Source: Euprymna scolopes (Eukaryota). From it: a stretch of DNA of 64,000 nt. Made by a program: the position numbers and the translations under genes. The notes beneath the pieces were generated by a model. The model had not been told where the DNA came from, made no database searches, and saw nothing but the letters and a program-made list of their open reading frames with translations. The stretch lies in NCBI GenBank assembly GCA_053919585.1, contig CM132799.1, one strand, 5' to 3'. Shown in pieces: positions 19,501 through 64,000 of this stretch. Within the stretch, counting starts at the first letter, position 1. Every line of letters starts with the position of its first letter.

Positions 19501-20420
19501 CAATCCTACATTCACTTATTCATTCATTACACGAGATCACGGGACTAATGGCTATCGGCCTTGTTCTATCTGCACGGAATTATTTTTTCAAGCATAACAC
19601 GTATTGAGATTACCAAATTATTTTATTTAGTGTATAGTCTGTTTAAACAAACAAAGTAGGGACACATAACTCCTAAAAGTTTCTTTTTTAAGTCGATGTC
19701 GGAATAACAATTCCACATAAATTAAATTAAATATGTTATCAATATTATTATTGTTCAAATATTTATTAAATCACAATTTTACATTGAACACTTAAAACAA
19801 TTTTCTCGCAAGGACAATTAACTAAGATACAGCTACTTAATAAAATCAATTTTTCTGAATGTAATATGAAAATGAGATGGTCCCTTCATTGTATAGTTTG
19901 CAAGAATAATATTATATATAGACATAAATGAAAGATTAAAGTAAGGCAACTTTTGTATATATCAATCAAATTGTGAACAAACAAAAAACACACAGGAATA
20001 CTAATTTATATATATTTGACCAAATATGTAACAATGATTTAAAAAGTTAAAAATAAATTACTCGTGCGCTACGAACGAAAACCGAAAAAGAAAACGTTTA
20101 GTTTACGATTTAATTTTTCTCTTTGACGTTAATGCCTGAGTTATAAATACATATTTGCTGCAAGGCTAAAAATTACAACATTATCCAATAGTTATTACGC
20201 TACGCAAACATAGTGGTAATGCCGTCGTTCGATTTTCACCTAACAAATTATTTTCTTTTAAATTTTCACACTTGTGCACTGATTATCCTCGGCAAAAATA
20301 CATGTATAAAATTTCGCATGAATTCCAAATTCAATATATTAGGTTGCATGCGTATATACCAAACAGTTACAGAGGGGTTGAGTAGGCGAAATTTTTTGAA
20401 AAAATATATTTACGCATACA

Positions 20421-20423
<3 letters not shown>

Positions 20424-20487
<64 letters not shown>

Positions 20488-20748
20488 ATATTTATGTTTA
20501 CTATAAACTTTTTACGCAAATATTACGCAATTATGAATCATGTAGAATATTTGCAATCATATAATTACACGAAAGAGTTAACTAAAGATGATGATCTCAT
20601 AGAAAAACAGAAAATTTCATAGAATATTATTTAAAATGAACGTTTAAAATAATATGCATATTAGCTAGATAGTTTTGCAGATGAATGCAATTCCACAACC
20701 CATATATAACAACATTGTATTCTCTGTTTTAATAAATATAAAAAGGGG

Positions 20749-20815
<67 letters not shown>
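20424..20815. repeat. Two (TA)n microsatellites (20424-20484, 20754-20815)
   Basis: Directly visible. Confidence 0.95.
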
Positions 20816-20817
<2 letters not shown>

Positions 20818-21246
20818 TCTGTTTGAAGGCCCGTCAATGCAGAAATGATTCACTCGATGGGAATAAATAAATAATAATAAACTATTTAAAAAGTTCAATG
20901 ATTTTTAATTAGTATTTATTTACTTTGAATGTAGATGGTATACTCCCTTAAATATTTCTGGGGTATCCCCATTTGCAAAATTTTCTTTTTTGTGGTATTT
21001 CATTTGATTAAAATCGTCCGTAAAATTTTTGGGGTTACAAACGCATATTTAATGTTTCCAAATATTACGTTAATGTATGAAGCAATTCTGTTATACTGTT
21101 ATACTGTCCAAGGAAGAGAATAAATTTATTTGTTTCTGGATGTATAAGGAAACTGTTTGATATCTCTGCTCTATTGTTAATTTCTGGTTGAAATATTTCT
21201 ATCAGAAACTATTCCTTTATTTTAAGTTTTCTTTGGTCTCTCTCTC

Positions 21247-24200
21247 AAAGGCGAGGAATATAGTAGACAAAGGTAACAGGCAAGAAATATAGTAGACAAA
21301 GTTAAAAGATGAGAAATATAGTAGACAAAGTTAAAAGATGAGAAATATAGTAGGCAAAGTTAAAAGATGAGAAATATAGTAGACAAAGTTAAAAGATGAG
21401 AAATATAGTAGACAAAGTTAAAAGATGAGAAATATAGTAGACAAAGTTAAAAGATAGGAAATATAGTAGGCAAAGTTAAAAGATGAGAAATATAGAAGAC
21501 AAAGTTAAAAGATGAGAAATATAGTAGACAAAGTTAAAAGAGGAGAAATATAGTAGACAAAGTTAAAAGATGAGAAATATAGTAGACAAAGTTAAAAGAT
21601 GAGAAATATAGTAGGCAAAGTTAAAAGATGAGAAATATAGTAGACAAAGTTAAAAGATGAGAAATATAGTAGACAAAGTTAAAAGATGAGAAATATAGTA
21701 GACAAAGTTAAAAGATGAGAAATATAGTAGACAAAGTTAAAAGATGAGAAATATAGTAGGCAAAGTTAAAAGATGAGAAATATAGAAGACAAAGTTAAAA
21801 GATGAGAAATATAGTAGACAAAGTTAAAAGATGAGAAATATAGTAGACAAAGTTAAAAGATGAGAAAAATAGAAGACAAAGTTAAAAGATGAGAAATATA
21901 GTAGGCAAAGTTAAATGATGAGAAATATAGTAGGCAAAGTAAAAAGGCAAGAAATATAGTAGACAAAAATAAAAGGCAAGAAATATAGTAGACAAAAATA
22001 AAAGGCAAGAAATATAGTGGCCAAATGTAACAGGCAAGAAATATAGTAGACAAAATTAAAAGATGAGAAATATAGTAGACAAAGTTAAAAGATGAGAAAT
22101 ATAGTAGACAAAGTTAAAAGATGAGAAATATAGAAGACAAAGTTAAAAGATGAGAAATATAGTAGGCAAAGTTAAAAGATGAGAAATATAGTAGACAAAG
22201 TTAAAAGATGAGAAATATAGTAGACAAAGTTAAAAGATGAGAAATATAGTAGGCAAAGTTAAAAGATGAGAAATATAGTAGACAAAGTTAAAAGATGAGA
22301 AATATAGTAGACAAAGTTAAAAGATGAGAAATATAGAAGACAAAGTTAAAAGATGAGAAATATAGTAGACAAAGTTAAAAGATGAGAAATATAGAAGACA
22401 AAGTTAAAAGATGAGAAATATAGTAGACAAAGTTAAAAGATGAGAAATATAGTAGGCAAAGTTAAATGATGAGAAATATAGTAGACAAAGTTAAAAGATG
22501 AGAAATATAGTAGGCAAAGTAAAAAGGCAAGAAATATAGTAGACAAAAATAAAAGGCAAGACATATAGTAGACAAAAATAAAAGGCAAGAAATATAGTAG
22601 ACAAAGGTAACAGGCAAGAAATATAGTAGACAAAGTTAAAAGATGAGAAATATAGTAGACAAAGTTAAAAGATGAGAAATATAGTAGACAAAGTTAAAAG
22701 ATGAGAAATATAGTAGGCAAAGTTAAAAGATGAGAAATATAGTAGACAAAGTTAAAAGATGAGAAATATAGTAGACAAAGTTAAAAGATGAGAAATATAG
22801 TAGACAAAGTTAAAAGATGAGAAATATAGTAGACAAAGTTAAAAGATGAGAAATATAGAAGACAAAGTTAAAAGATGAGAAATATAGTAGGCAAAGTTAA
22901 AAGATGAAAAATATAGTAGACAAAGTTAAAAGATGAGAAATATAGTAGACAAAGTTAAAAGATGAGAAATATAGTAGGCAAAGTTAAAAGATGAGAAATA
23001 TAGTAGACAAAGTTAAAAGATGAGAAATATAGTAGGCAAAGTTAAAAGATGAGAAATATGGAAGACAAAGTTAAAAGATGAGAAATATAGTAGACAAAGT
23101 TAAAAGATGAGAAATATAGAAGACAAAGTTAAAAGATGAGAAATATAGTAGACAAAGTTAAAAGATGAGAAATATAGTAGACAAAGTTAAAAGATGAGAA
23201 ATATAGTAGACAAAGTTAAAAGATGAGAAATATAGTAGGCAAAGTTAAAAGATGAGAAATATAGTAGACAAAGTTAAAAGATGAGAAATATAGTAGACAA
23301 AGTTAAAAGATGAGAAATATAGAAGACAAAGTTAAAAGATGAGAAATATAGTAGACAAAGTTAAAAGATGAGAAATATAGTAGACAAAGTTAAAAGATGA
23401 GAAATATAGTAGACAAAGTTAAAAGATGAGAAATATAGAAGACAAAGTTAAAAGATGAGAAATATAGTAGACAAAGTTAAAAGATGAGAAATATAGTAGT
23501 CAAAGTTAAAAGATGAGAAATATAGTAGGCAAAGTTAAATGATGAGAAATATAGTAGACAAAGTTAAAAGATGAGAAATATAGTAGGCAAAGTAAAAAGG
23601 CAAGAAATATAGTAGACAAAAATAAAAGGCAAGAAATATAGTAGACAAAAATAAAAGGCAAGAAATATAGTAGACAAAGGTAACAGGCAAGAAATATAGT
23701 AGACAAAGTTAAAAGATGAGAAATATAGTAGACAAAGTTAAAAGATGAGAAATATAGTAGACAAAGTTAAAAGATGAGAAATATAGAAGACAAAGTTAAA
23801 AGATGAGAAATATAGTAGGCAAAGTTAAAAGATGAGAAATATAGTAGACAAAGTTAAAAGATGAGAAATATAGAAGACAAAGTTAAAAGATGAGAAATAT
23901 AGAAGACAAAGTTAAAAGATGAGAAATATAGTAGACAAAGTTAAAAGATGAGAAATATAGAAGACAAAGTTAAAAGATGAGAAATATAGTAGACAAAGTT
24001 AAAAGATGAGAAATATAGAAGACAAAGTTAAAAGATGAGAAATATAGTAGACAAAGTTAAAAGATGAGAAATATAGAAGAAAAATTAAAAGATCAGAAAT
24101 ATAGTAGACAAAGGTAAAAGATGAGAAATATAGTAGACAAAGTTAAAAGATGAGAAATATAGAAGACAAAGTTAAAAGATGAGAAATATAGAAGACAAAG

Positions 24201-27200
24201 TTAAAAAATGAGAAATATAGTAGGCAAAGTTAAATGATGAGAAATATAGTAGGCAAAGTAAAAAGGCAAGAAATATAGTAGACAAAAATAAAAGGCAAGA
24301 AATATAGTAGACAAAAATAAAAGGCAAGAAATATAGTAGACAAAGGTAACAGGCAGGAAATATAGTAGACAAAGTTAAAAGATGAGAAATATAGTAGACA
24401 AAGTTAAAAGATGAGAAATATAGTAGACAAAGTTAAAAGATGAGAAATATAGAAGACAAAGTTAAAAGATGAGAAATATAGTAGGCAAAGTTAAAAGATG
24501 AGAAATATAGTAGACAAAGTTAAAAGATGAGAAATATAGTAGACAAAGTTAAAAGATGAGAAATATAGTAGACAAAGTTAAAAGATGAGAAATATAGTAG
24601 ACAAAGTTAAAAGATGAGAAATATAGTAGGCAAAGTTAAAAGATGAGAAATATAGTAGACAAAGTTAAAAGATGAGAAATATAGTAGGCAAAGTTAAAAG
24701 ATGAGAAATATAGTAGACAAAGTTAAAAGATGAGAAATATAGTAGACAAAGTTAAAAGATGAGAAATATAGAAGACAAAGTTAAAAGATGAGAAATATAG
24801 TAGACAAAGTTAAAAGATGAGAAATATAGTAGACAAAGTTAAAAGATGAGAAATATAGTAGACAAAGTTAAAAGATGAGAAATATAGTAGGCAAAGTTAA
24901 AAGATGAGAAATATAGTAGACAAAGTTAAAAGATGAGAAATATAGTAGACAAAGTTAAAAGATGAGAAATATAGAAGACAAAGTTAAAAGATGAGAAATA
25001 TAGTAGACAAAGTTAAAAGATGAGAAATATAGTAGACAAAGTTAAAAGATGAGAAATATAGTAGACAAAGTTAAAAGATGAGAAATATAGAAGACAAAGT
25101 TAAAAGATGAGAAATATAGTAGACAAAGTTAAAAGATGAGAAATATAGTAGTCAAAGTTAAAAGATGAGAAATATAGTAGGCAAAGTTAAATGATGAGAA
25201 ATATAGTAGACAAAGTTAAAAGATGAGAAATATAGTAGGCAAAGTAAAAAGGCAAGAAATATAGTAGACAAAAATAAAAGGCAAGAAATATAGTAGACAA
25301 AAATAAAAGGCAAGAAATATAGTAGACAAAGGTAACAGGCAAGAAATATAGTAGACAAAGTTAAAAGATGAGAAATATAGTAGACAAAGTTAAAAGATGA
25401 GAAATATAGTAGACAAAGTTAAAAGATGAGAAATATAGAAGACAAAGTTAAAAGATGAGAAATATAGTAGGCAAAGTTAAAAGATGAGAAATATAGTAGA
25501 CAAAGTTAAAAGATGAGAAATATAGAAGACAAAGTTAAAAGATGAGAAATATAGAAGACAAAGTTAAAAGATGAGAAATATAGTAGACAAAGTTAAAAGA
25601 TGAGAAATATAGAAGACAAAGTTAAAAGATGAGAAATATAGTAGACAAAGTTAAAAGATGAGAAATATAGAAGACAAAGTTAAAAGATGAGAAATATAGT
25701 AGACAAAGTTAAAAGATGAGAAATATAGAAGAAAAATTAAAAGATCAGAAATATAGTAGACAAAGGTAAAAGATGAGAAATATAGTAGACAAAGTTAAAA
25801 GATGAGAAATATAGAAGACAAAGTTAAAAGATGAGAAATATAGAAGACAAAGTTAAAAAATGAGAAATATAGTAGGCAAAGTTAAATGATGAGAAATATA
25901 GTAGGCAAAGTAAAAAGGCAAGAAATATAGTAGACAAAAATAAAAGGCAAGAAATATAGTAGACAAAAATAAAAGGCAAGAAATATAGTAGACAAAGGTA
26001 ACAGGCAGGAAATATAGTAGACAAAGTTAAAAGATGAGAAATATAGTAGACAAAGTTAAAAGATGAGAAATATAGTAGACAAAGTTAAAAGATGAGAAAT
26101 ATAGAAGACAAAGTTAAAAGATGAGAAATATAGTAGGCAAAGTTAAAAGATGAGAAATATAGTAGACAAAGTTAAAAGATGAGAAATATAGTAGACAAAG
26201 TTAAAAGATGAGAAATATAGTAGACAAAGTTAAAAGATGAGAAATATAGTAGACAAAGTTAAAAGATGAGAAATATAGTAGGCAAAGTTAAAAGATGAGA
26301 AATATAGTAGACAAAGTTAAAAGATGAGAAATATAGTAGGCAAAGTTAAAAGATGAGAAATATAGTAGACAAAGTTAAAAGATGAGAAATATAGTAGACA
26401 AAGTTAAAAGATGAGAAATATAGAAGACAAAGTTAAAAGATGAGAAATATAGTAGACAAAGTTAAAAGATGAGAAATATAGTAGACAAAGTTAAAAGATG
26501 AGAAATATAGTAGACAAAGTAAAAAGATGAGAAATATAGAAGACAAAGTTAAAAGATGAGAAATATAGTAGGCAAAGTTAAATGATGAGAAATATAGTAG
26601 GCAAAGTTAAAAGATGAGAAAAATAGTAGACAAAAATAAAAGGCAAGAAATATAGTAGACAAAAATAAAAGGCAAGAAATATAGTAGACAAAGGTAACAG
26701 GCAAGAAATATAGTAGACCAAGTTAAAAGATGAAAAATATAGTAGACAAAGTTAAAAGATGAGAAATATAGTAGACAAAGTTAAAAGATGAGAAATATAG
26801 TAGGCAAAGTTAAAAGATGAGAAATATAGCAGACAAAGTTAAAAGATGAGAAATATAGTAGACAAAGTTAAAAGATGAGAAATATAGAAGACAAAGTTAA
26901 AAGATGAGAAATATAGTAGACAAAGTTAAAAGATGAGAAATATAGAAGACAAAATTAAAAGATGAGAAATATAGTAGACAATGGTAAAAGATGAGAATTA
27001 TAGTAGACAAAGTTAAAAGATGAGAAATATAGAAGACAAAGTTAAAAGATGAGAAATATAGAAGACAAAGTAAAAAGATGAGAAATATAGTAGGCAAAGT
27101 TAAATGATGAGAAATATAGTAGGCAAAGTAAAAAGGCAAGAAATATAGTAGACAAAAATAAAAGGCAAGAAATATAGTAGACAAAAATAAAAGGCAAGAA

Positions 27201-33200: not shown

Positions 33201-36200
33201 AATATAGAAGACAAAGTTAAAAGATGAGAAATATAGTAGACAAAGTTAAAAGATGAGAAATATAGAAGACAAAATTAAAAGATGAGAAATATAGTAGACA
33301 AAGGTAAAAGATGAGAAATATAGTAGACAAAGTTAAAAGATGAGAAATATAGAAGACAAAGTTAAAAGATGAGAAATATAGAAGACAAAGTAAAAAGATG
33401 AGAAATATAGTAGGCAAAGTTAAATGATGAGAAATATAGTAGGCAAAGTAAAAAGGCAAGAAATATAGTAGACAAAAAAAAAGGCAAGAAATATAGTAGA
33501 CAAAAATAAAAGGCAAGAAATATAGTAGACAAAAATAAAAGGCAAGAAATATAGTAGACAAAGGTAACAGGCAAGAAATATAGTAGGCAAAGTTAAAAGA
33601 TGAGAAATATAGTAGACAAAGTTAAAAGATGAGAAATATATTAGACAAAGTTAAAAGATGAGAAATATAGAAGACAAAGTTAAAAGATGAGAAATATAGT
33701 AGGCAAAGTTAAAAGATGAGAAATATAGTAGACAAAGTTAAAAGATGAGAAATATAGTAGACAACGTTAAAAGATGAGAAATATAGAAGACAAAGTTAAA
33801 AGATGAGAAATATAGTAGACAAAGTTAAAAGATGAGAAATATAGTAGACAAAGTTAAAAGATGAGAAATATAGTAGACAAAGTTAAAAGATGAGAAATAT
33901 AATAGACAAAGTTAAAAGATGAGAAATATAGTAGGCAAAGTTAAATGATGAGAAATATAGTAGGCAAAGTAAAAAGGCAAGAAATATAGTAGACAAAAAT
34001 AAAAGGCAAGAAATATAGTAGACAAAAATAAAAGGCAAGAAATATAGTAGACAAAGGTAACAGGCAAGAAATATAGTAGACAAAGTTAAAAGATGAGAAA
34101 TATAGTAGACAAAGTTAAAAGATGAGAAATATAGTAGGCAAAGTTAAAAGATGAGAAATATAGAAGACAAAGTTAAAAGATGAGAAATATAGAAGACAAA
34201 GTTAAAAGATGAGAAATATAGTAGGCAAAGTTAAAAGATGAGAAATATAGAAGACAAAGTTAAAAGATGAGAAATATAGTAGACAAAATTAAAAGATGAG
34301 AAATATAGTAGACAAAGTTAAAAGATGAGAAATATAGTAGACAAAGTTAAAAGATGAGAAATATAGTAGGCAAAGTTAAAAGATGAGAAATATAGAAGAC
34401 AAAGTTAAAAGATGAGAAATATAGAAGACAAAGTTAAAAGATGAGAAATATAGTAGGCAAAGTTAAAAGATGAGAAATATAGAAGACAAAGTTAAAAGAT
34501 GAGAAATATAGTAGACAAAGTTAAAAGATGAGAAATATAGTAGGCAAAGTTAAAAGATGAGAAATATAGTAGGCAAAGTTAAAAGATGAGAAATATAGAA
34601 GACAAAGTTAAAAGATGAGAAATATAGTAGACAAAGTTAAAAGATGAGAAATATAGTAGACAAAGTTAAAAGATGAGAAATATAGAAGACAATGTTAAAA
34701 GATGAGAAATATAGTAGGCAAAGTTAAATGATGAGAAATATAGTAGGCAAAGTAAAAAGGCAAGAAATATAGTAGACAAAAATAAAAGGCAAGAAATATA
34801 GTAGACAAAAATAAATAGCAAGAAATATAGTAGACGAAGGTAACAGGCAAGAAATATAGTAGACCAAGTTAAAAGATGAGAAATATAGTAGACAAAGTTA
34901 AAAGATGAGAAATATAGTAGACAAAGTTAAAAGATGAGAAATATAGAAGACAAAGTTAAAAGATGAGAAATATAGTAGGCAAAGTTAAAAGATGAGAAAT
35001 ATAGTAGGCAAAGTTAAAAGATGAGAAATATAGTAGACAAAGTTAAAAGATGAGTAATATAGTAGAATAAGTTAAAAGATGAGAAATATAGTAGGCAAAG
35101 TTAAAAGATGAGAAATATAGTAGACAAAGTTAAAAGATGAGAAATATAGTAGGCAAAGTTAAAAGATGAGAAATATAGTAGGCAAAGTTAAAAGATGAGA
35201 AATATAGTAGACAAAGTTAAAAGATGAGAAATATAGTAGGCAAAGTTAAAAGATGAGAAATATAGTAGACAAAGTTAAAAGATGAGAAATATAGTAGGCA
35301 AAGTTAAATGATGAGAAATATAGTAGGCAAAGTTAAATGATGAGAAATATAGTAGACAAAGTTAAAAGATGATAAATATAGTAGACAAAGTTAAAAGATG
35401 AGAAATATAGTAGACAAAGTTAAAAGATGAGAAATATAATAGACAAAGTTAAAAGATGAGAAATATAGTAGGCAAAGTTAAATGATGAGAAATATAGTAG
35501 GCAAAGTAAAAAGGCAAGAAATATAGTAGACAAAAATAAAAGGCAAGAAATATAGTAGACAAAAATAAAAGGCAAGAAATATAGTAGACAAAGGTAACAG
35601 GCAAGAAATATAGTAGACAAAGTTAAAAGATGAGAAATATAGTAGACAAAGTTAAAAGATGAGAAATATAGTAGGCAAAGTTAAAAGATGAGAAATATAG
35701 AAGACAAAGTTAAAAGATGAGAAATATAGTAGACAAAGTTAAAAGATGAGAAATATAGTAGGCAAAGTTAAAAGATGAGAAATATAGAAGACAAAGTTAA
35801 AAGATGAGAAATATAGTAGACAAAGTTAAAAGATGAGAAATATAGTAGACAAAGTTAAAAGATGAGAAATATAGTAGACAAAGTTAAAAGATGAGAAATA
35901 TAGTAGGCAAAGTTAAAAGATGAGAAATATAGAAGACAAAGTTAAAAGATGAGAAATATAGAAGACAAAGTTAAAAGATGAGAAATATAGTAGGCAAAGT
36001 TAAAAGATGAGAAATATAGAAGACAAAGTTAAAAGATGAGAAATATAGTAGACAAAGTTAAAAGATGAGAAATATAGTAGGCAAAGTTAAAAGATGAGAA
36101 ATATAGTAGGCAAAGTTAAAATATGAGAAATATAGAAGACAAAGTTAAAAGATGAGAAATATAGTAGACAAAGTTAAAAGATGAGAAATATAGTAGACAA

Positions 36201-39200
36201 AGTTAAAAGATGAGAAATATAGAAGACAATGTTAAAAGATGAGAAATATAGTAGGCAAAGTTAAATGATGAGAAATATAGTAGGCAAAGTAAAAAGGCAA
36301 GAAATATAGTAGACAAAAATAAAAGGCAAGAAATATAGTAGACAAAAATAAAAGGCAAGAAATATAGTAGACAAAGGTAACAGGCAAGAAATATAGTAGA
36401 CCAAGTTAAAAGATGAGAAATATAGTAGACAAAGTTAAAAGATGAGAAATATAGTAGACACAGTTAAAAGATGAGAAATATAGTAGACAAAGTTAAAAGA
36501 TGAGAAATATAGTAGGCAAAGTTAAATGATGAGAAATATAGTAGACAAAGTTAAAAGATGAGAAATATAGTAGGCAAAGTTAAAAGATGAGAAATATAGT
36601 AGACAAAGTTAAAAGATGAGAAACATAGTAGACAAAGTTAAAAGATGAGAAATATAGAAGACAAAGTTAAAAGATGAGAAATATAGTAGGCAAAGTTAAA
36701 AGATGAGAAATATAGTAGACAAAGTTAAAGGATGAGAAATATAGAAGACAACGTTAAAAGATGAGAAATATAGTAGGCAAAGTTAAAAGATGAGAAATAT
36801 AGTAGAAAAAGTTAAAAGATGAGAAATATAGAAGACAAAGTTAAAAGATGAGAAATATAGTAGGCAAAGTTAAAAGATGAGAAATATAGAAGACAACGTT
36901 AAAAGATGAGAAATATAGTAGGCAAATGTAAAAGATGAGAAATATAGTAGACAAAGTTAAAATATGAGAAATATAGTAGGCAAAGTTAAAAGATGAGAAA
37001 TATAGTAGACAAAGTTAAAAGATGAGAAATATAGTAGACAAAGTTAAAAGATGAGAAATATAGTAGGCAAAGTTAAAAGATGAGAAATATAGAAGACAAA
37101 GTTAAAAGATGAGAAATATAGTAGGCAAAGTTAAATGATGAGAAATATAGTAGACAAAGTTAAAAGATGAGAAATATAGTAGGCAAAGTTAAAAGATGAG
37201 AAATATAGTAGACAAAGTTAAAAGATGAGAAATATAGTAGACAAAGTTAAAAGATGAGAAATATAGTAGGCAAAGTTAAAAGATTAGAAATATAGTAGAC
37301 AAAGTTAAAAGATGAGAAATATAGTAGACAAAGTTAAAAGATGAGAAATATAGTAGACAAAGTTAAAAGATGAGAAATATAGTAGACAAAGTTAAAAGAT
37401 GAGAAATATAGTAGACAAAGTTAAAAGATGAGAAATATAGTAGACAAAGTTAAAAGATGAGAAATATAGTAGACAAAGTTAAAAGATGAGAAATATAGAA
37501 GACAAAGTTAAAAGATGAGTAATATAGTAGGCAAAGTAAAAAGATGAGAAATATAGAAGACAAAGTTAAAAGATGAGAAATATAGTAGGCAAAGTTAAAA
37601 GATGAGAAATATAGTAGACAAAGTTAAAAGATGAGAAATATAGTAGGCAAAGTTAAAAGATGAGAAATATAGTAGACAAAGTTAAAAGATGAGAAATATA
37701 GTAGACAAAGTTAAAAGATGAGAAATATAGTAGACAAAGTTAAAAGATGAGAAATATAGTAGGAAAAGTTAAAAGATGAGAAATATAGTAGACAAAGTTA
37801 AAAGATGAGAAATATAGTAGACAAAGTTAAAAGATGAGAAATATAGTAGACAAAGTTAAAAGATGAGAAATATAGTAGACAAAGTTAAAAGATGAGAAAT
37901 ATAGTAGACAAAGTTAAAAGATGAGAAATATAGTAGACAAAGTTAAAAGATGAGCAATATAGTAGACAAAGTTAAAAGATGAGAAATATAGAAGACAAAG
38001 TTAAAAGATGAGAAATATAGAAGACAAAGTTAAAAGATGAGAAATATAGTAGGCAAAGTTAAAAGATGAGAAATATAGTAGACAACGTTAAAAGATGAGA
38101 AATATAGTAGACAAAGTTAAAAGATGAGAAATATAGTAGGCAAAGTTAAATGAGCAGAAATATAGTAGAAAAAGTTAAAAGATGAGAAATATAGTAGGCA
38201 AAGTTAAAAGATGAGAAATATAGTAGACAAAGTTAAAAGATGAGAAATATAGTAGACAAAGTTAAAAGATGAGAAATATAGAAGACAAAGTTAAAAGATG
38301 AGAAATATAGTAGGCAAAGTTAAAAGATGAGAAATATAGTAGACAAAGTTAAAAGATGAGAAATATAGAAGACAACGTTAAAAGATGAGAAATATAGTAG
38401 GCAAAGTTAAAAGATGAGAAATATAGTAGACAACGTTAAAAGATGAGAAATATAGTAGACAAAGTTAAAAGATGACAAATATAGAAGACAAAGTTAAAAG
38501 ATGACAAATATAGTAGACAAAGTTAAAAGATGAGAAATATAGAAGACAACGTTAAAAGATGAGAAATATAGTAGACAAAGTTAAAAGATGAGAAATATAG
38601 TAGACAAAGTTAAAAGATGAGAAATATAGAAGACAAAGTTAAAAGATGAGAAATATAGTAGGCAAAGTTAAAAGATTAGAAATATAGAAGACAAAGTTAA
38701 AAGATGAGAAATATAGTAGGCAAAGTTAAAAGATGAGAAATATAGTAGACAAAGTTAAAAGATGAGAACTATAGTAGGCAAAGTTAAAAGATGAGAAATA
38801 AAGTAGACAAAGTTAAAAGATGAGAAATATAGTAGACAAAGTTAAAAGATGAGAAATATAGTAGGTGAAGTTAAAAGATGAGAAATATAGAAGACAAAGT
38901 TAAAAGATGAGAAATATAGTAGGCAAAGTTAAATGATGAGAAATATAGTAGACAAAGTTAAAAGATGAGAAATATAGTAGGCAAAGTTAAAAGATGAGAA
39001 ATATAGTAGACAAAGTTAAAAGATGAGAAATATAGTAGGCAAAGTTAAAAGATGAGAAATATAGAAGACGAAGTTAAAAGATGAGAAATATAGTAGGCAA
39101 AGTTAAAAGATGAGAAATATAGTAGACAAAGTTAAAAGATGAGAAATATAGTAGACAACGTTAAAAGATGAGAAATATAGTAGACAAAGTTAATAGATGA

Positions 39201-47500: not shown

Positions 47501-50500
47501 AGTAGACAAAGTTAAAAGATGAGAAATATAGTAGGAAAAGTTAAAAGATGAGAAATATAGTAGACAAAGTTAAAAGATGAGAAATATAGTAGACAAAGTT
47601 AAAAGATGAGAAATATAGTAGACAAAGTTAAAAGATGAGAAATATAGTAGACAAAGTTAAAAGATGAGAAATATAGTAGACAAAGTTAAAAGATGAGAAA
47701 TATAGTAGACAAAGTTAAAAGATGAGCAATATAGTAGACAAAGTTAAAAGATGAGAAATATAGAAGACAAAGTTAAAAGATGAGAAATATAGAAGACAAA
47801 GTTAAAAGATGAGAAATATAGTAGGCAAAGTTAAAAGATGAGAAATATAGTAGACAACGTTAAAAGATGAGAAATATAGTAGACAAAGTTAAAAGATGAG
47901 AAATATAGTAGGCAAAGTTAAGTGAGCAGAAATATAGTAGACAAAGTTAAAAGATGAGAAATATAGTAGGCAAAGTTAAAAGATGAGAAATATAGTAGAC
48001 AAAGTTAAAAGATGAGAAATATAGTAGACAAAGTTAAAAGATGAGAAATATAGAAGACAAAGTTAAAAGATGAGAAATATAGTAGGCAAAGTTAAAAGAT
48101 GAGAAATATAGTAGACAAAGTTAAAAGATGAGAAATATAGAAGACAACGTTAAAAGATGAGAAATATAGTAGGCAAAGTTAAAAGATGAGAAATATAGTA
48201 GACAAAGTTAAAAGATGACAAATATAGTAGACAAAGTTAAAAGATGACAAATATAGAAGACAAAGTTAAAAGATGACAAATATAGTAGACAAAGTTAAAA
48301 GATGAGAAATATAGAAGACAACGTTAAAAGATGAGAAATATAGTAGGCAAAGTTAAAAGATGAGAAATATAGTAGACAAAGTTAAAAGATGAGAAATATA
48401 GAAGACAAAGTTAAAAGATGAGAAATATAGTAGGCAAAGTTAAAAGATTAGAAATATAGAAGACAAAGTTAAAAGATGAGAAATATAGTAGGCAAAGTTA
48501 AAAGATGAGAAATATAGTAGACAAAGTTAAAAGATGAGAACTATAGTAGGCAAAGTTAAAAGATGAGAAATAAAGTAGACAAAGTTAAAAGATGAGAAAT
48601 ATAGTAGACAAAGTTAAAAGATGAGAAATATAGTAGGTGAAGTTAAAAGATGAGAAATATAGAAGACAAAGTTAAAAGATGAGAAATATAGTAGGCAAAG
48701 TTAAATGATGAGAAATATAGTAGACAAAGTTAAAAGATGAGAAATATAGTAGGCAAAGTTAAAAGATGAGAAATATAGTAGACAAAGTTAAAAGATGAGA
48801 AATATAGTAGACAAAGTTAAAAGATGAGAAATATAGTAGGCAAAGTTAAAAGATGAGAAATATAGTAGACAAAGTTAAAAGATGAGAAATATAGTAGACA
48901 AAGTTAAAAGATGAGAAATATAGTAGACAAAGTTAAAAGATGAGAAATATAGTAGGCAAAGTTAAAAGATGAGAAATATAGAAGACGAAGTTAAAAGATG
49001 AGAAATATAGTAGGCAAAGTTAAAAGATGAGAAATATAGTAGACAAAGTTAAAAGATGAGAAATATAGTAGACAACGTTAAAAGATGAGAAATATAGTAG
49101 ACAAAGTTAAAAGATGAGAAATATAGTAGGCAAAGTTAAATGATGAGAAATATAGTAGACAAAGTTAAAAGATGAGAAATATAGTAGACAAAGTTAAAAG
49201 ATGAGAAATATAGAAGACAACGTTAAAAGATGAGAAATATAGTAGGCAAAGTTAAAAGATGAGAAATATAGAAGACAAAGTTAAATGATGAGAAATATAG
49301 TAGACAAAGTTAAAAGATGAGAAATATAGTAGACAACGTTAAAAGATGAGAAATATAGTAGACAAAGTTAAAAGATGAGAAATATAGTAGGCAAAGTTAA
49401 ATGATGAGAAATATAGTAGACAAAGTTAAAAGATGAGAAATATAGTAGGCAAAGTTAAAAGATGAGAAATATAGTAGACAAAGTTAAAAGATTAGAAATA
49501 TAGTAGACAAAGTTAAAAGATGAGAAATATAGAAGACAAAGTTAAAAGATGAGAAATATAGTAGGCAAAGTTAAAAGATGAGAAATATAGTAGACAAAGT
49601 TAAAAGATGAGAAATATAGAAGACAACGTTAAAAGATGAGAAATATAGTAGGCAAAGTTAAAAGATGAGAAATATAGTAGACAAAGTTAAAAGATGACAA
49701 ATATAGTAGACAAAGTTAAAAGATGAGAAATATAGAAGACAAAGTTAAAAGATGAGAAATATAGTAGACAAAGTTAAAAGATGAGAAATATAGAAGACAA
49801 CGTTAAAAGATGAGAAATATAGTAGGCAAAGTTAAAAGATGAGAAATATAGTAGACAAAGTTAAAAGATGAGAAATATAGAAGACAAAGTTAAAAGATGA
49901 GAAATATAGTAGGCAAAGTTAAAAGATTAGAAATATAGAAGACAAAGTTAAAAGATGAGAAATATAGTAGGCAAATTTAAAAGATGAGAAATATAGTAGA
50001 CAAAGTTAAAAGATGAGAACTATAGTAGGCAAAGTTAAAAGATGAGAAATATAGTAGACAAAGTTAAAAGATGAGAAATATAGTAGACAAAGTTAAAAGA
50101 TGAGAAATATAGTAGGCGAAGTTAAAAGATGAGAAATATAGTAGACAAAGTTAAAAGATGAGAAATATAGTAGGCAAAGTTAAATGATGAGAAATATAGT
50201 AGACAAAGTTAAAAGATGAGAAATATAGTAGGCAAAGTTAAAAGATGAGAAATATAGTAGACAAAGTTAAAAGATGAGAAATATAGTAGACAAAGTTAAA
50301 AGATGAGAAATATAGTAGGCAAAGTTAAAAGATGAGAAATATAGTAGACAAAGTTAAAAGATGAGAAATATAGTAGACAAAATTAAAAGATGAGAAATAT
50401 AGTAGACAAAGTTAAAAGATGAGAAATATAGTAGGCAAAGTTAAAAGATGAGAAATATAGAAGACAAAGTTAAAAGATGAGAAATATAGTAGGCAAAGTT

Positions 50501-53500
50501 AAAAGATGAGAAATATAGTAGACAAAGTTAAAAGATGAGAAATATAGTAGACAACGTTAAAAGATGAGAAATATAGTAGACAAAGTTAAAAGATGAGAAA
50601 AATAGTAGGCAAATTTAAATGATGAGAAATATAGTAGACAAAGTTAAAAGATGAGAAATATAGTAGACAAAGTTAAAAGATGAGAAATATAGAAGACAAC
50701 GTTAAAAGATGAGAAATATAGTAGGCAAAGTTAAAAGATGAGAAATATAGAAGACAAAGTTAAATGATGAGAAATATAGTAGACAAAGTTAAAAGATGAG
50801 AAATATAGTAGGCAAAGTTAAAAGATGAGAAATATAGTAGACAAAGTTAAAGGATGAGAAATATAGAAGACAACGTTAAAAGATGAGAAATATAGTAGGC
50901 AAAGTTAAAAGATGAGAAATATAGTAGACAAAGTTAAAAGATGAGAAATATAGAAGACAAAGTTAAAAGATGAGAAATATAGTAGGCAAAGTTAAAAGAT
51001 GAGAAATATAGAAGACAAAGTTAAAAGATGAGAAATATAGTAGGCAAAGGTAAAAGATGAGAAATATAGTAGACAAAGTTAAAATATGAGAAATATAGTA
51101 GGCAAAGTTAAAAGATGAGAAATATAGTAGACAAAGTTAAAAGATGAGAAATATAGTAGACAAAGTTAAAAGATGAGAAATATAGTAGGCAAAGTTAAAA
51201 GATGAGAAATATAGAAGACAAAGTTAAAAGATGAGTAATATAGTAGGCAAAGTTAAATGATGAGAAATATAGTAGACAAAGTTAAAAGATGAGAAATATA
51301 GTAGGCAAAGTTAAAAGATGAGAAATATAGTAGACAAAGTTAAGAGATGAGAAATATAGTAGACAAAGTTAAAAGATGAGAAATATAGTAGGCAAAGTTA
51401 AAAGATTAGAAATATAGTAGACAAAGTTAAAAGATGAGAAATATAGTAGACAAAGTTAAAAGATGAGAAATATAGTAGACAAAGTTAAAAGATGAGAAAT
51501 ATAGTAGACAAAGTTAAAAGATGAGAAATATAGTAGACAAAGTTAAAAGATGAGAAATATAGTAGACAAAGTTAAAAGATGAGAAATATAGTAGACAAAG
51601 TTAAAAGATGAGAAATATAGAAGACAAAGTTAAAAGATGAGTAATATAGTAGGCAAAGTAAAAAGATGAGAAATATAGAAGACAAAGTTAAAAGATGAGA
51701 AATATAGTAGGCAAAGTTAAAAGATGAGAAATATAGTAGACAAAGTTAAAAGATGAGAAATATAGTAGGCAAAGTTAAAAGATGAGAAATATAGTAGACA
51801 AAGTTAAAAGATGAGAAATATAGTAGACAAAGTTAAAAGATGAGAAATATAGTAGACAAAGTTAAAAGATGAGAAATATAGTAGGAAAAGTTAAAAGATG
51901 AGAAATATAGTAGACAAAGTTAAAAGATGAGAAATATAGTAGACAAAGTTAAAAGATGAGAAATATAGTAGACAAAGTTAAAAGATGAGAAATATAGTAG
52001 ACAAAGTTAAAAGATGAGAAATATAGTAGACAAAGTTAAAAGATGAGAAATATAGTAGACAAAGTTAAAAGATGAGCAATATAGTAGACAAAGTTAAAAG
52101 ATGAGAAATATAGAAGACAAAGTTAAAAGATGAGAAATATAGAAGACAAAGTTAAAAGATGAGAAATATAGTAGGCAAAGTTAAAAGATGAGAAATATAG
52201 TAGACAACGTTAAAAGATGAGAAATATAGTAGACAAAGTTAAAAGATGAGAAATATAGTAGGCAAAGTTAAATGAGCAGAAATATAGTAGGCAAAGTTAA
52301 AAGATGAGAAATATAGTAGGCAAAGTTAAAAGATGAGAAATATAGTAGACAAAGTTAAAAGATGAGAAATATAGTAGACAAAGTTAAAAGATGAGAAATA
52401 TAGAAGACAAAGTTAAAAGATGAGAAATATAGTAGGCAAAGTTAAAAGATGAGAAATATAGTAGACAAAGTTAAAAGATGAGAAATATAGTAGACAAAGT
52501 TAAAAGATGAGAAATATAGTAGGCAAAGTTAAAAGATGAGAAATATAGTAGACAAAGTTAAAAGATGACAAATATAGTAGACAAAGTTAAAAGATGACAA
52601 ATATAGAAGACAAAGTTAAAAGATGACAAATATAGTAGACAAAGTTAAAAGATGAGAAATATAGAAGACAACGTTAAAAGATGAGAAATATAGTAGGCAA
52701 AGTTAAAAGATGAGAAATATAGTAGACAAAGTTAAAAGATGAGAAATATAGAAGACAAAGTTAAAAGATGAGAAATATAGTAGGCAAAGTTAAAAGATTA
52801 GAAATATAGAAGACAAAGTTAAAAGATGAGAAATATAGTAGGCAAAGTTAAAAGATGAGAAATATAGTAGACAAAGTTAAAAGATGAGAACTATAGTAGG
52901 CAAAGTTAAAAGATGAGAAATAAAGTAGACAAAGTTAAAAGATGAGAAATATAGTAGACAAAGTTAAAAGATGAGAAATATAGTAGGTGAAGTTAAAAGA
53001 TGAGAAATATAGAAGACAAAGTTAAAAGATGAGAAATATAGTAGGCAAAGTTAAATGATGAGAAATATAGTAGACAAAGTTAAAAGATGAGAAATATAGT
53101 AGGCAAAGTTAAAAGATGAGAAATATAGTAGACAAAGTTAAAAGATGAGAAATATAGTAGACAAAGTTAAAAGATGAGAAATATAGTAGGCAAAGTTAAA
53201 AGATGAGAAATATAGTAGACAAAGTTAAAAGATGAGAAATATAGTAGACAAAGTTAAAAGATGAGAAATATAGTAGACAAAGTTAAAAGATGAGAAATAT
53301 AGTAGGCAAAGTTAAAAGATGAGAAATATAGAAGACGAAGTTAAAAGATGAGAAATATAGTAGGCAAAGTTAAAAGATGAGAAATATAGTAGACAAAGTT
53401 AAAAGATGAGAAATATAGTAGACAACGTTAAAAGATGAGAAATATAGTAGACAAAGTTAAAAGATGAGAAATATAGTAGGCAAAGTTAAATGATGAGAAA

Positions 53501-56500
53501 TATAGTAGACAAAGTTAAAAGATGAGAAATATAGTAGACAAAGTTAAAAGATGAGAAATATAGAAGACAACGTTAAAAGATGAGAAATATAGTAGGCAAA
53601 GTTAAAAGATGAGAAATATAGAAGACAAAGTTAAATGATGAGAAATATAGTAGACAAAGTTAAAAGATGAGAAATATAGTAGGCAAAGTTAAAAGATGAG
53701 AAATATAGTAGACAAAGTTAAAAGATGAGAAATATAGTAGACAAAGTTAAAAGATGAGAAATATAGTAGACAAAGTTAAAAGATGAGAAATATAGTAGAC
53801 AAAGTTAAAAGATGAGAAATATAGTAGACAAAGTTAAAAGATGAGAAATATAAAAGACAAAGTTAAAAGATGAGACATATAGAAGACAAAGTTAAAAGAT
53901 GAGAAATATAGTAGGCGAAGTTAAAAGATGAGAAATATAGTAGACAAAGTTAAAAGATGAGAAATATAGTAGACAACGTTAAAAGATGAGAAATATAGTA
54001 GACAAAGTTAAAAGATGAGAAATATAGTAGGCAAAGTTAAATGATGAGAAATATAGTAGACAAAGTTAAAAGATGAGAAATATAGTAGGCAAAGTTAAAA
54101 GATGAGAAATATAGTAGACAAAGTTAAAAGATGAGAAATATAGTAGACAAAGTTAAAAGATGAGAAATATAGAAGACAAAGTTAAAAGATGAGAAATATA
54201 GTAGGCAAAGTTAAAAGATGAGAAATATAGTAGACAAAGTTAAAAGATGAGAAATATAGAAGACAACGTTAAAAGATGAGAAATATAGTAGGCAAAGTTA
54301 AAAGATGAGAAATATAGTAGACAAAGTTAAAAGATGACAAATATAGTAGACAAAGTTAAAAGATGAGAAATATAGAAGACAAAGTTAAAAGATGAGAAAT
54401 ATAGTAGACAAAGTTAAAAGATGAGAAATATAGAAGACAACGTTAAAAGATGAGAAATATAGTAGGCAAAGTTAAAAGATGAGAAATATAGTAGACAAAG
54501 TTAAAAGATGAGAAATATAGAAGACAAAGTTAAAAGATGAGAAATATAGTAGGCAAAGTTAAAAGATTAGAAATATAGAAGACAAAGTTAAAAGATGAGA
54601 AATATAGTAGGCAAAGTTAAAAGATGAGAAATATAGTAGACAAAGTTAAAAGATGAGAACTATAGTAGGCAAAGTTAAAAGATGAGAAATATAGTAGACA
54701 AAGTTAAAAGATGAGAAATATAGTAGACAAAGTTAAAAGATGAGAAATATAGTAGGCGAAGTTAAAAGATGAGAAATATAGTAGACAAAGTTAAAAGATG
54801 AGAAATATAGTAGGCAAAGTTAAATGATGAGAAATATAGTAGACAAAGTTAAAAGATGAGAAATATAGTAGGCAAAGTTAAAAGATGAGAAATATAGTAG
54901 ACAAAGTTAAAAGATGAGAAATATAGTAGACAAAGTTAAAAGATGAGAAATATAGTAGGCAAAGTTAAAAGATGAGAAATATAGTAGACAAAGTTAAAAG
55001 ATGAGAAATATAGTAGACAAAGTTAAAAGATGAGAAATATAGTAGACAAAGTTAAAAGATGAGAAATATAGTAGGCAAAGTTAAAAGATGAGAAATATAG
55101 AAGACAAAGTTAAAAGATGAGAAATATAGTAGGCAAAGTTAAATGATGAGAAATATAGTAGACAAAGTTAAAAGATGAGAAATATAGTAGACAACGTTAA
55201 AAGATGAGAAATATAGTAGACAAAGTTAAAAGATGAGAAAAATAGTAGGCAAAGTTAAATGATGAGAAATATAGTAGACAAAGTTAAAAGATGAGAAATA
55301 TAGTAGACAAAGTTAAAAGATGAGAAATATAGAAGACAACGTTAAAAGATGAGAAATATAGTAGGCAAAGTTAAAAGATGAGAAATATAGAAGACAAAGT
55401 TAAATGATGAGAAATATAGTAGACAAAGTTAAAAGATGAGAAATATAGTAGGAATAGTTAAAAGATGAGAAATATAGTAGACAAAGTTAAAAGATGAGAA
55501 ATATAGAAGACAAAGTTAAAAGATGAGAAATATAGTAGACAAAGTTAAAAGATGAGAAATATAGAAGACAACGTTAAAAGATGAGAAATATAGTAGGCAA
55601 AGTTAAAAGATGAGAAATATAGTAGACAAAGTTAAAAGATGAGAAATATAGTAGACAAAGTTAAAAGATGAGAAATATAGTAGGCAAAGTTAAATGATGA
55701 GAAATATAGTAGACAAAGTTAAAAGATGAGAAATATAGTAGGCAAAGTTAAAAGATGAGAAATATAGTAGGCAAAGTTAAAAGATGAGAAATATAGTAGG
55801 CAAAGTTAAAATATGAGAAATATAGTAGGCAAAGTTAAAAGATGAGAAATATAGTAGGCAAAGTTAAAAGATGAGAAATATAGTAGACAAAGTTAAAAGA
55901 TGAGAAATATAGTAGGCAAAGTTAAATGATGAGAAATATAGTAGGCAAAGTTAAATGATGAGAAATATAGTAGACAAAGTTAAAAGATGAGAAATATAGA
56001 AGACAAAGTTAAAAGATGAGAAATATAGTAGACAAAGTTAAAAGATGAGAAATATAGTAGACAAAGTTAAAAGATGAGAAATATAGTAGGCAAAGTTAAA
56101 AGATGAGAAATATAGTAGACAAAGTTAAAAGATGAGAAATATAGTAGACAATGTTAAAAGATGAGAAATATAGTAGGCAAAGTTAAATGATGAGAAATAT
56201 AGTAGACAAAGTTAAAAGATGAGAAATATAGTAGACAAAGTTAAAAGATGAGAAATATAGTAGACAAAGTTAAAAGATGAGAAATATAGTAGACAAAGTT
56301 AAAAGATGAGAAATATAGAAGACAAAGTTAAAAGATGAGAAATATAGTAGACAAAGTTAAAAGATGAGAAATATAGTAGACAAAGTTAAAAGATGAGAAA
56401 TATAGTAGACAAAGTTAAAAGATGAGAAATATAGTAGGCAAAGTTAAATGATGAGAAATATAGTAGACAAAGTTAAAAGATGAGAAATATAGTAGGCAAA

Positions 56501-62500: not shown

Positions 62501-64000
62501 AAGTTAAAAGATGAGAAATATAGTAGGCAAAGTTAAATGATGAGAAATATAGTAGACAAAGTTAAAAGATGAGAAATATAGTAGGCAAAGTTAAAAGATG
62601 AGAAATATAGTAGACAAAGTTAAAAGATGAGAAATATAGTAGACAAAGTTAAAAGATGAGAAATATAGAAGACAAAGTTAAAAGATGAGAAATATAGTGG
62701 GCAAAATTAAAAGATGAGAAATATAGTAGACAAAGTTAAAAGATGAGAAATATAGAAGACAACGTTAAAAGATGAGAAATATAGTAGGCAAAGTTAAAAG
62801 ATGAGAAATATAGTAGACAAAGTTAAAAGATGACAAATATAGTAGACAAAGTTAAAAGATGAGAAATATAGAAGACAAAGTTAAAAGATGAGAAATATAG
62901 TAGACAAAGTTAAAAGATGAGAAATATAGAAGACAACGTTAAAAGATGAGAAATATAGTAGGCAAAGTTAAAAGATGAGAAATATAGTAGACAAAGTTAA
63001 AAGATGACAAATATAGTAGACAAAGTTAAAAGATGAGAAATATAGAAGACAAAGTTAAAAGATGAGAAATATAGTAGACAAAGTTAAAAGATGAGAAATA
63101 TAGAAGACAACGTTAAAAGATGAGAAATATAGTAGGCAAAGTTAAAAGATGAGAAATATAGTAGACAAAGTTAAAAGATGACAAATATAGTAGACAAAGT
63201 TAAAAGATGAGAAATATTGAAGACAAAGTTAAAAGATGAGAAATATAGTAGACAAAGTTAAAAGATGAGAAATATAGAAGACAAAGTTAAAAGATGAGAA
63301 ATATAGTAGGCAAAGTTAAAAGATTAGAAATATAGAAGACAAAGTTAAAAGATGAGAAATATAGTAGGCAAAGTTAAAAGATGAGAAATATAGTAGACAA
63401 AGTTAAAAGATGAGAACTATAGTAGGCAAAGTTAAAAGATGAGAAATATAGTAGACAAAGTTAAAAGATGAGAAATATAGTAGAAAAAGTTAAAAGATGA
63501 GAAATATAGTAGGCGAAGTTAAAAGATGAGAAATATAGAAGACAAAGTTAAAAGATGAGAAATATAGTAGGCAAAGTTAAATGATGAGAAATATAGTAGA
63601 CAAAGTTAAAAGATGAGAAATATAGTAGGCAAAGTTAAAAGATAAGAAATATAGTAGACAAAGTTAAAAGATGAGAAATATAGTAGACAAAGTTAAAAGA
63701 TGAGAAATATAGTAGGCAAAGTTAAAAGATGAGAAATATAGTAGACAAAGTTAAAAGATGAGAAATATAGTAGACAAAGTTAAAAGATGAGAAATATAGT
63801 AGACAAAGTTAAAAGATGAGAAATATAGTAGACAAAGTTAAAAGATGAGAAATATAGTAGACAAAGTTAAAAGATGAGAAATATAGTAGACAAAGTTAAA
63901 AGATGAGAAATATAGTAGACAAAGTTAAAAGATGAGAAATATAGTAGACAAAGTTAAAAGATGAGAAATATAGTAGACAAAGTTAAAAGATGAGCAATAT
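21247..64000. repeat. 29-bp satellite DNA array, consensus AGAAATATAGTAGACAAAGTTAAAAGATG, ~1,470 monomers, open-ended at the window edge
   Basis: A continuous head-to-tail 29-bp period with no inversion or insertion seen. The consensus is 16 A, 6 G, 6 T, 1 C (24% GC, 76% purine on the + strand). Only rare 1-bp deletions occur (e.g. ~24080, ~28187, ~39977, ~58350). Confidence 0.99.

What the first reader, a model, noticed from the sequence alone, without database searches (positions are those of the whole stretch)
21247..64000. Resolved edge of a large 29-bp satellite that I do not recognise: candidate centromeric or (sub)telomeric array
Seen: more than 42 kb of single-orientation 29-mers with no transposon insertion, starting abruptly next to a transposon-littered flank, with strong strand asymmetry (22/29 purines, one C). 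Established: insertion-free homogeneous arrays next to decayed TE-rich DNA are typical of centromeres and pericentromeres, and some telomerase-lacking dipterans (Chironomus, Anopheles) have complex terminal satellites. Inference: this is a young, actively homogenised structural array. Five monomers span 145 bp, close to the 147-bp nucleosome core, which could allow nucleosome phasing. Function cannot be established from sequence alone.
Basis: partly seen in the sequence, partly recalled or inferred. Interest (0 to 1): 0.75.

Follow-up and report, generated by a model that had tools for sequence, protein, structure and literature searches.

The report
Single-locus 64-kb array of 29-bp repeats
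This is a real, uninterrupted 64-kb run of about 2,200 copies of a 29-base unit at one place in the middle of one chromosome of a 5.9-Gb mollusc genome; it is best read as an overgrown local minisatellite, it is certainly not telomeric, and nothing here marks it as a centromere.

Summary
It runs from window 21247 to G000:C17:45,965,148. That is 63.9 kb, or 2,203 head-to-tail units of GAGAAATATAGTAGACAAAGTTAAAAGAT, all in one orientation, with no insertion. Both edges are resolved and more diverged than the core.

It is the only copy in the 5.9-Gb assembly. Two pattern searches gave 2,073 and 906 genome-wide hits, and every hit lies inside this array.

C17 is 129.4 Mb long and has (CCCTAA)n at its start and (TTAGGG)n at its end. 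The array lies 45.9 Mb from the nearer end, so the (sub)telomeric reading is refuted.

The centromeric reading is not excluded but has no support:
- there is one 64-kb locus and no related array on any other contig;
- sampled DNA within 0.5 Mb on either side is ordinary;
- another single-locus array with a 30-bp unit lies 485 kb away.

"Young and homogenised" is supported. Multi-kb blocks are duplicated, one with 123 units identical.

The origin of the unit is unknown. It is not derived from the truncated repeat at its left edge. Two polyA RNA runs showed no reads on the array. A contig from another sample bridges the left junction.

The scan has noted many comparable single-locus arrays with other units in this genome. 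My verdict is a new member of a known kind, of modest interest.

The parts
21247..64000 (+). The part of the 29-bp tandem array that lies in the window. The whole array is G000:C17:45,901,247-45,965,148: 63.9 kb, 2,203 units, consensus GAGAAATATAGTAGACAAAGTTAAAAGAT.
21247..21281 (+). Diverged left-edge units carrying GGCGAGG (a CpG) and GGTAACAGGC. Similar GGCGAGG units close the right edge at L016:~1060-1148. They are likely relics of the older form of the unit.
   Evidence: The last three units differ from the consensus by 6-8 edits.
20862..21244 (+). Copy of an interspersed repeat, 70-81% identical to copies on C41, C37, C14 and C43. It is cut off at 21244, where the array starts. The other copies continue with sequence unrelated to the array.
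23080..26500 (+). Local block duplication. A run of 61 consecutive units starting at 23080 recurs unchanged 57 units (1,652 bp) downstream, starting at 24732.
34936..42900 (+). Domain with block periodicity of 178 units (about 5.16 kb).
43635..53700 (+). Domain with block periodicity of 150-159 units (about 4.35-4.6 kb), with at least three block copies. The marker pair of a 28-bp unit followed by a 30-bp unit recurs at 38126, 43287, 47898 and 52248.

Best explanation
This is a locus-specific, AT-rich, strand-asymmetric minisatellite that has grown to satellite size: 2,203 units, 63.9 kb. I infer that a 29-bp stretch at this site was first duplicated by replication slippage. The array then grew and kept itself uniform through repeated unequal exchange or gene conversion between misaligned copies, first unit by unit and later in blocks of 57 to 178 units. 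The edges take little part in such exchange, so they keep older, more diverged units that contain a CpG. The amplified core carries the CpG-decayed forms GATGAG and GGCAAG. Nothing in the sequence points to a sequence-specific function. It has no coding capacity and no single-strand structure, and no polyA transcripts were seen. I read it as a neutral or selfish by-product of tandem-repeat dynamics, one of many such single-locus arrays in this very large, repeat-rich genome. Shown here: its extent, uniqueness, position, orientation, block structure, edge gradient, and the same junction in a second sample. Inferred: the growth mechanism, the lack of function and the recent age.
For: The array is a single locus. 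A 37-nt pattern with up to 3 mismatches gave 2,073 forward and 0 reverse hits in the genome, and all 2,073 fall in the array. A 26-nt edge-unit pattern gave 906 hits, all in the array. Both edges are resolved inside continuous sequence without N. Edge units are diverged and the core is uniform: 0.8 edits per unit across the right two thirds, 1.2-1.7 in the left third, and 6-8 for the last three units. There is no global higher-order repeat. Instead there are local block duplications, including 123 identical units (3.57 kb) at a lag of 116 units. The longest stop-free run is 31 codons on the + strand. A 144-codon run on the - strand falls where variant units lack TTAA. The minimum folding energy is 0 kcal/mol on both strands. 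Raw polyA RNA reads from two runs gave 0 reads on the array and its unique flank. A contig from another sample (X1, record 2) bridges the flank-array junction at 20893-21308. Another unrelated single-locus array with a 30-bp unit lies 485 kb away. Earlier notes of this scan list many other single-locus arrays of tens of kb in the same genome (unverified leads).
Against: No progenitor single-copy unit was found, so birth in place is inferred and not shown. At 64 kb the array is longer than typical minisatellites. In run X1 the array words are far more abundant than the flank depth would predict. This could mean more copies than were assembled, or enrichment in a chromatin or RNA library, either of which would hint at a special state. 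No raw DNA reads were available to check copy number or length polymorphism. The two polyA runs cover only certain tissues, and some RNA-labelled runs do hold a few array words.
Confidence: 0.75

Rival explanations
1. It is a chromosome-specific centromeric satellite: the array is, or lies within, the CENP-A domain of chromosome scaffold C17.
For: It is long, homogeneous, insertion-free, in one orientation and AT-rich (74.6%). It lies at 35.5% of a telomere-to-telomere scaffold, which would suit a submetacentric chromosome. Block duplications resemble those of centromeric arrays. The one decapodiform genome paper I read (Sepia officinalis, PMC13218726) gives no centromeric sequence, so there is no competing candidate. 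The unexplained over-representation in run X1 could reflect a chromatin-enriched library.
Against: No related array exists on any other contig. It is only 64 kb on a 129-Mb chromosome. Twenty 10-kb samples within 0.5 Mb on either side look like ordinary interspersed DNA with microsatellites, not a satellite-rich pericentromere. A second, unrelated single-locus array lies 485 kb away, and the scan lists many more with other units, far more kinds than one per chromosome would need. The unit shows no dyad or protein-box feature.
Confidence: 0.08
2. It is a transposon-derived or transposon-carried array. The unit was amplified from a piece of the flanking mobile element, or the array is the internal tandem region of a Helentron-like element, like other arrays noted in this genome.
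For: The array starts exactly where a copy of an interspersed repeat is cut off, at 21244. A U2-module tandem, noted elsewhere in this scan as part of a mobile element, lies 2 kb upstream. Earlier notes describe several transposon-born arrays in this genome.
Against: The unit has no significant similarity to the 400 nt that follow the break in four other copies of the repeat, on either strand (p 0.1-0.99 against shuffles). The rest of that repeat is not in the 19 kb to the right of the array. No seed better than chance exists in either flank. No 29-mer-like copy exists anywhere else in 5.9 Gb, which a mobile carrier would have spread. The right flank is unique.
Confidence: 0.07
3. The array is real, but its assembled length or internal block structure is an assembly artefact: collapsed, inflated, or with falsely duplicated blocks.
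For: Perfect 3.57-kb duplicates inside a tandem array are the kind of structure assemblers can create or collapse. Array-to-flank depth ratios differ wildly between runs X1 and X5.
Against: Both junctions lie in continuous sequence without N. The left junction is bridged by a contig from an independent sample. Array words occur in runs from several studies. Block copies carry distinguishing variants, which allows long accurate reads to be placed. The tool states that summed contig depth is not a copy number.
Confidence: 0.05

Closest known systems
Expanded AT-rich minisatellites at human rare fragile sites (FRA16B, 33-bp unit; FRA10B, about 42-bp unit). Recalled from my own knowledge, not tested against their sequences.
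   Same: A single interstitial locus, a unit of about 30-40 bp, AT-rich, head-to-tail, and expanded to thousands of copies and tens of kb by slippage and unequal exchange.
   Different: Those units are almost pure AT and form hairpins or cruciforms. This unit is 76% purine on one strand and folds to 0 kcal/mol on both strands. Fragility and length polymorphism are untested here. There is no sequence relationship.
Single-locus tandem arrays of short units noted elsewhere in this genome by this scan (13-, 26-, 27-, 36-, 39-, 41-, 42-, 43-, 47-, 74- and 84-bp units, 10-100 kb).
   Same: Same genome, same size class, one locus each, homogeneous, and built from copied kb-sized blocks (unverified notes). 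I verified one further example myself: a 30-bp unit in 94 copies at C17:46.449-46.452 Mb.
   Different: Several of those were traced to a transposon or gene fragment still attached at the edge. For this array no parent sequence could be found.
Centromeric satellites with short units, such as the chicken 41-42-bp CNM repeat and chromosome-specific centromeric repeats of chicken and potato. Recalled from my own knowledge.
   Same: A short unit, long homogeneous one-orientation arrays, block or higher-order structure, and AT richness.
   Different: Those are defined by CENP-A binding and position at the primary constriction. Neither is known here. The array is small for the chromosome, and its neighbourhood does not look pericentromeric.
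   Same: Only that both are tandem arrays of non-telomerase-type units.
   Different: This genome has canonical TTAGGG-type telomeres on the same scaffold, and the array is 45.9 Mb from the nearest end.

Membership tests
Telomeric or subtelomeric satellite | Lies at or next to a chromosome end. | tested here: not met
   The array is at 45.90-45.97 Mb of a 129.37-Mb scaffold. That scaffold starts with (CCCTAA)n at 1-2847 and ends with about 3 kb of (TTAGGG)n.
Telomeric or subtelomeric satellite | Occurs at several chromosome ends. | tested here: not met
   All 2,073 and all 906 genome-wide pattern hits lie in this one array.
Centromeric satellite | Bound by CENP-A/CenH3 and located at the primary constriction. 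| not testable with these tools
   No chromatin or cytological data could be identified. The library type of runs X1-X4 is unknown.
Centromeric satellite | The same or a related repeat family at one site on most chromosomes (the shared-family type). | tested here: not met
   No copy was found outside C17:45.90-45.97 Mb in 925 contigs.
Centromeric satellite | Embedded in satellite- or transposon-rich pericentromeric heterochromatin distinct from the chromosome arms. | tested here: inconclusive
   Twenty 10-kb samples within 0.5 Mb on either side show interspersed DNA with 1-42% tandem-repeat cover, mostly AT microsatellites and two small arrays.
Minisatellite / VNTR (expanded) | A unit of about 10-100 bp repeated head to tail at one locus. 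| tested here: met
   29-bp unit, 2,203 copies, one orientation, single locus.
Minisatellite / VNTR (expanded) | Interspersed unit variants, and growth by unequal exchange shown by internal duplications. | tested here: met
   There are 149 unit variants, and three of them make up 68% of units. Block duplications occur at lags of 57, 104, 116, 150-159 and 178 units.
Minisatellite / VNTR (expanded) | Length polymorphism between individuals. | not testable with these tools
   Only contigs of other DNA samples were available, and summed contig depth is not a copy number.
Transposon-derived satellite | The unit is homologous to a segment of a mobile element, with the parent attached or dispersed copies present. 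| tested here: not met
   There is no similarity to the continuation of the truncated flank repeat, no seed in the flanks and no dispersed copy.
Hairpin-forming AT-rich fragile-site minisatellite (FRA16B type) | The unit can form a stable hairpin or cruciform. | tested here: not met
   The minimum free energy is 0 kcal/mol for 145 nt of either strand, no better than shuffles.

The most novel reading that the evidence does not exclude
The array is the functional, chromosome-specific centromere of this chromosome (or its core). The many different single-locus short-unit arrays seen across this cephalopod genome would then include one private centromeric satellite per chromosome. That would give the first sequence-level handle on cephalopod centromeres. 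The strong over-representation of the 29-mer in runs X1-X4 would then reflect chromatin enrichment.
Probability: 0.07. Interest if true: 0.75.

Novelty: new member of a known kind. Interest (0 to 1): 0.25.

Why it matters
As it stands, this is one more private tandem array in a repeat-rich 5.9-Gb genome, and ordinary as a kind. It is useful in three small ways. First, it is a fully resolved array with both edges, a clear edge-to-core gradient and datable block duplications, so it is a clean case for studying how short-unit arrays grow. Second, it gives a ready chromosome-specific FISH or PCR marker for one chromosome pair in a group whose karyotypes are still disputed (PMC13218726). Third, together with the other arrays the scan has noted, it suggests that decapodiform cephalopod genomes spawn tens-of-kb arrays of 13-84-bp units at many single loci. 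That deserves a systematic census and a test against centromere positions, which are still unknown in cephalopods.

Tried and rejected
1. Telomeric reading: rejected after reading both ends of C17.

2. Birth from the truncated left-flank repeat: I fetched four other copies and compared the 400 nt after their break with edge and core units on both strands against shuffles. Nothing was significant.

3. The remainder of that repeat on the far side of the array: absent.

4. A seed copy in 21 kb of left flank or 19 kb of right flank: the best match was 20-21 of 29 positions, the same as in shuffled flanks.

5. Diverged relatives elsewhere in the genome: two patterns with 3 mismatches allowed gave no hit outside the array.

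6. A global higher-order repeat: none. Only local block lags were found.

7. Coding or structured-RNA readings:
   - no meaningful ORF;
   - no Rfam family in the first ~1.75 kb of the array scanned, window 21247-23000;
   - no fold.

8. Copy number from public runs: only contigs were available for DNA, and the depth ratios contradict each other. I did not use them.

10. Literature:
   - none of four 15-18-nt pieces of the unit, on either strand, appears in any held paper;
   - three word searches on cephalopod satellites, tandem repeats and centromeres turned up no description of cephalopod satellite or centromere sequence;
   - a fourth word search, on mollusc satellitomes, listed only non-cephalopod papers, judged by their titles.

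The N runs in the window were left alone. Telomere-type repeats seen at the scaffold ends were not sent to any search tool.
Full report
**What is there.** Tandem Repeats Finder finds a single array from window 21253 to the window's end: period 29, 1,474 copies, 94% matches and no indels at its resolution. The sequence shows a sharp start. The consensus is GAGAAATATAGTAGACAAAGTTAAAAGAT. GC is about 0.25 and GC skew about +0.65 to +0.73 throughout.

**Full extent.** The window is G000:C17:45,880,001-45,944,000 in a 5.9-Gb assembly of 925 contigs. I fetched the DNA beyond the window. The array continues for another 21.1 kb and ends at L016:~1148, which is C17:45,965,148. A dynamic-programming segmentation of the whole array gives 2,203 units. 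Of these, 2,179 are 29 bp and the rest 27-31 bp. The mean is 0.035 edits per base.
- Every unit is within 8 edits of the consensus.
- 39% of units are identical to the consensus, and three variants make up 68% of all units.
- The main variable positions are 12 (T/A), 15 (A/G), 19 (A/C) and 26 (A/T).
- There is no interruption by foreign sequence and no reverse-oriented unit.
- AT content is 74.6% and purines are 76.1% on the + strand.

**Where it is and how many copies there are.** C17 is 129,369,499 bases long. Its first 2,847 bases are (CCCTAA)n and its last 3 kb are (TTAGGG)n. The scaffold therefore runs from telomere to telomere, with the canonical motif that PMC13218726 reports as the only experimentally determined cephalopod telomere motif. 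The array lies at 35.5% of the scaffold, 45.9 Mb from the nearer end.

A 37-nt pattern spanning a unit boundary, with up to three mismatches, has 2,073 forward and 0 reverse matches in the whole genome and none for the reversed control. I counted exactly 2,073 matches in the array sequence I hold. A 26-nt pattern built on the diverged edge unit gives 906 genome-wide matches and 906 in the array. The repeat therefore exists at one locus only in this assembly, unplaced contigs included.

**Internal structure.** There is no array-wide higher-order repeat. Identity of units at a given lag never exceeds 0.27, against a mean of 0.20. Locally the array is a mosaic of duplicated blocks:
- 61 consecutive units recur unchanged 57 units downstream;
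- runs of 23-40 units recur at a lag of 150-159 units;
- runs of 25-28 units recur at a lag of 178 units;
- 123 consecutive units (3.57 kb) recur unchanged at a lag of 116 units.

Marker indels recur at the matching spacings. The left third is less uniform (1.2-1.7 edits per unit) than the rest (about 0.8). The outermost units are the most diverged, at 6-8 edits at the right end.

Both edges carry units with GGCGAGG, which contains a CpG. The core has GATGAG or GGCAAG at that place, which are the two deamination products of that CpG (the decay reading is my inference). The consensus has no CpG. Most of the 147 CpGs in the array come from the A19C variant.

Two neighbouring blocks show zero differences over 3.57 kb. 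At animal mutation rates of 1e-9 to 1e-8 per site per generation (my own knowledge), this places the last duplication within roughly 1e4-1e5 generations (inference).

**Flanks and origin.** The left flank is full of repeats:
- a 414-aa ORF with a reverse-transcriptase domain (RVT_1, 1.7e-28);
- a 201-246-bp tandem followed by a weak U2 snRNA match;
- a very high-copy element at 20504-20743 bracketed by (AT)n;
- directly at the array, a copy of an interspersed repeat (20862-21244) that is 70-81% identical to copies on four other chromosomes.

All four other copies continue past the point that corresponds to 21244, with sequence conserved among themselves. So the copy here is cut off exactly where the array starts. 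I tested whether the unit was amplified from that continuation, as earlier scan notes report for other arrays in this genome. Local alignments of edge and core units to the 400 nt after the break, on both strands, are no better than against shuffles. The missing part of the repeat is not in the 19 kb to the right of the array. Neither flank holds a seed better than chance.

The first 600 bases of the right flank are unique in the genome, and the first ~9 kb of the right flank hold no ORF of 100 aa or more. The parent of the unit is therefore unknown. Birth in place from now-unrecognisable local sequence is the simplest reading, but it is not shown.

**Neighbourhood.** Twenty 10-kb samples at 50-kb steps within 0.5 Mb on either side look like ordinary interspersed DNA. 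GC is 0.26-0.38, and tandem-repeat cover is 1-42%, mostly AT-type microsatellites. Two samples hold other arrays with units of about 30 bp. One of them is a 30-bp unit at 99% identity, and it is again confined to one locus: 94 copies at C17:46,448,861-46,451,800.

**Other samples and RNA.** Words of the stretch occur in runs of at least ten studies. Most are labelled with one coded organism, and some are labelled "mollusc metagenome". I laid four runs on window 20300-21500.
- A 428-nt contig from run X1 bridges the flank-array junction (20893-21308). The junction therefore exists in an independent sample.
- The X1 and X5 flank contigs differ from the assembly by about 4-5% and share nine of those differences. 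This suggests a common alternative haplotype.
- Raw polyA RNA reads from two runs (1.8 and 1.5 billion letters read) put no read on the array or its unique flank. Reads from all 2,203 units would have piled onto the 250 bases offered. Other tissues and non-polyA RNA remain untested.
- Summed contig depth on the array is enormous in X1 and modest in X5 relative to the flank. The tool warns that this is not a copy number, and I drew no conclusion from it. It is recorded as unexplained.

**Other properties.** The longest stop-free run is 31 codons on the + strand and 144 on the - strand, the latter where variant units lack TTAA. Neither strand folds: the minimum free energy is 0 kcal/mol, no better than shuffles. 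The AA/TT signal has power only at 29 bp and its harmonics (14.5 and 9.66 bp), with nothing at 10.2-10.5 bp. That five units make 145 bp is arithmetic, and nucleosome spacing depends on linker length as well (inference).

**Comparison with known kinds.** In kind this is an expanded minisatellite or small satellite. It is closest in form to the expanded AT-rich minisatellites of human rare fragile sites (my own knowledge), but it lacks their hairpin potential. It also resembles the many single-locus arrays this scan has already noted on other DNA of this genome (unverified leads, one further case verified here). It fails both defining tests for a telomeric satellite. For a centromeric satellite, the shared-family criterion fails, the neighbourhood criterion is inconclusive, and CENP-A binding is untestable here. 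Four 15-18-nt pieces of the unit, on either strand, appear in no held paper. Dfam, Repbase and nt were not available.

**Verdict.** The telomeric reading is refuted. The centromeric reading is unsupported but not excluded (about 0.08). The best reading is a locus-specific array grown by slippage and unequal exchange, with no evident function (0.75). It is an undescribed member of a known kind. Interest 0.25.

Noticed in passing
window 19155-19282 (+), next to the tandem at 18071-19020: A weak Rfam U2 snRNA match (48.5 bits against a gathering score of 46) directly follows a 201-246-bp tandem repeat. This fits an earlier scan note about U2-module chains carried in a mobile element.
   Followed up: partly
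window 20504-20743, bracketed by (AT)n at 20424-20495 and 20753-20815: A very high-copy interspersed element. The genome search gave 809 first-look candidates, and summed word depth in a DNA run was up to 3.6e5 against about 19 for unique DNA. PolyA RNA reads there mostly run on into unlike sequence, so they come from other copies.
   Followed up: partly
window 8644-9888 (+): A 414-aa ORF with a reverse-transcriptase domain (RVT_1, E 1.7e-28). It is a retroelement remnant in the left flank.
   Followed up: partly
G000:C17:46,448,861-46,451,800 (L044:1-1848 holds its right part): Another single-locus tandem array 485 kb to the right of this one. It has a 30-bp unit and 94 copies that are about 99% alike, and it is found nowhere else in the genome.
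   Followed up: yes
L041:133-1523 (C17:46,300,133-46,301,523): CT-rich arrays with units of 30, 22 and 42 bp. The 30-bp part has 26.5 copies at 97% matches.
   Followed up: no
L023:2845-2995 (C17:2845-2995): A 51-bp GC-rich repeat (3 copies within the 3 kb fetched) directly inside the (CCCTAA)n telomere tract. It is a candidate subtelomeric repeat of this chromosome end.
   Followed up: no
window 20893-21308, as seen in runs X1 and X5: Flank contigs from two other samples differ from the assembly by about 4-5% and share nine differences, which suggests a common divergent haplotype at this locus. In X1 the array words are over-represented by orders of magnitude relative to the flank.
   Followed up: partly
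window 6255-6393 and 13627-13839: Two runs of N (139 and 213 bases) in the left flank.
   Followed up: no
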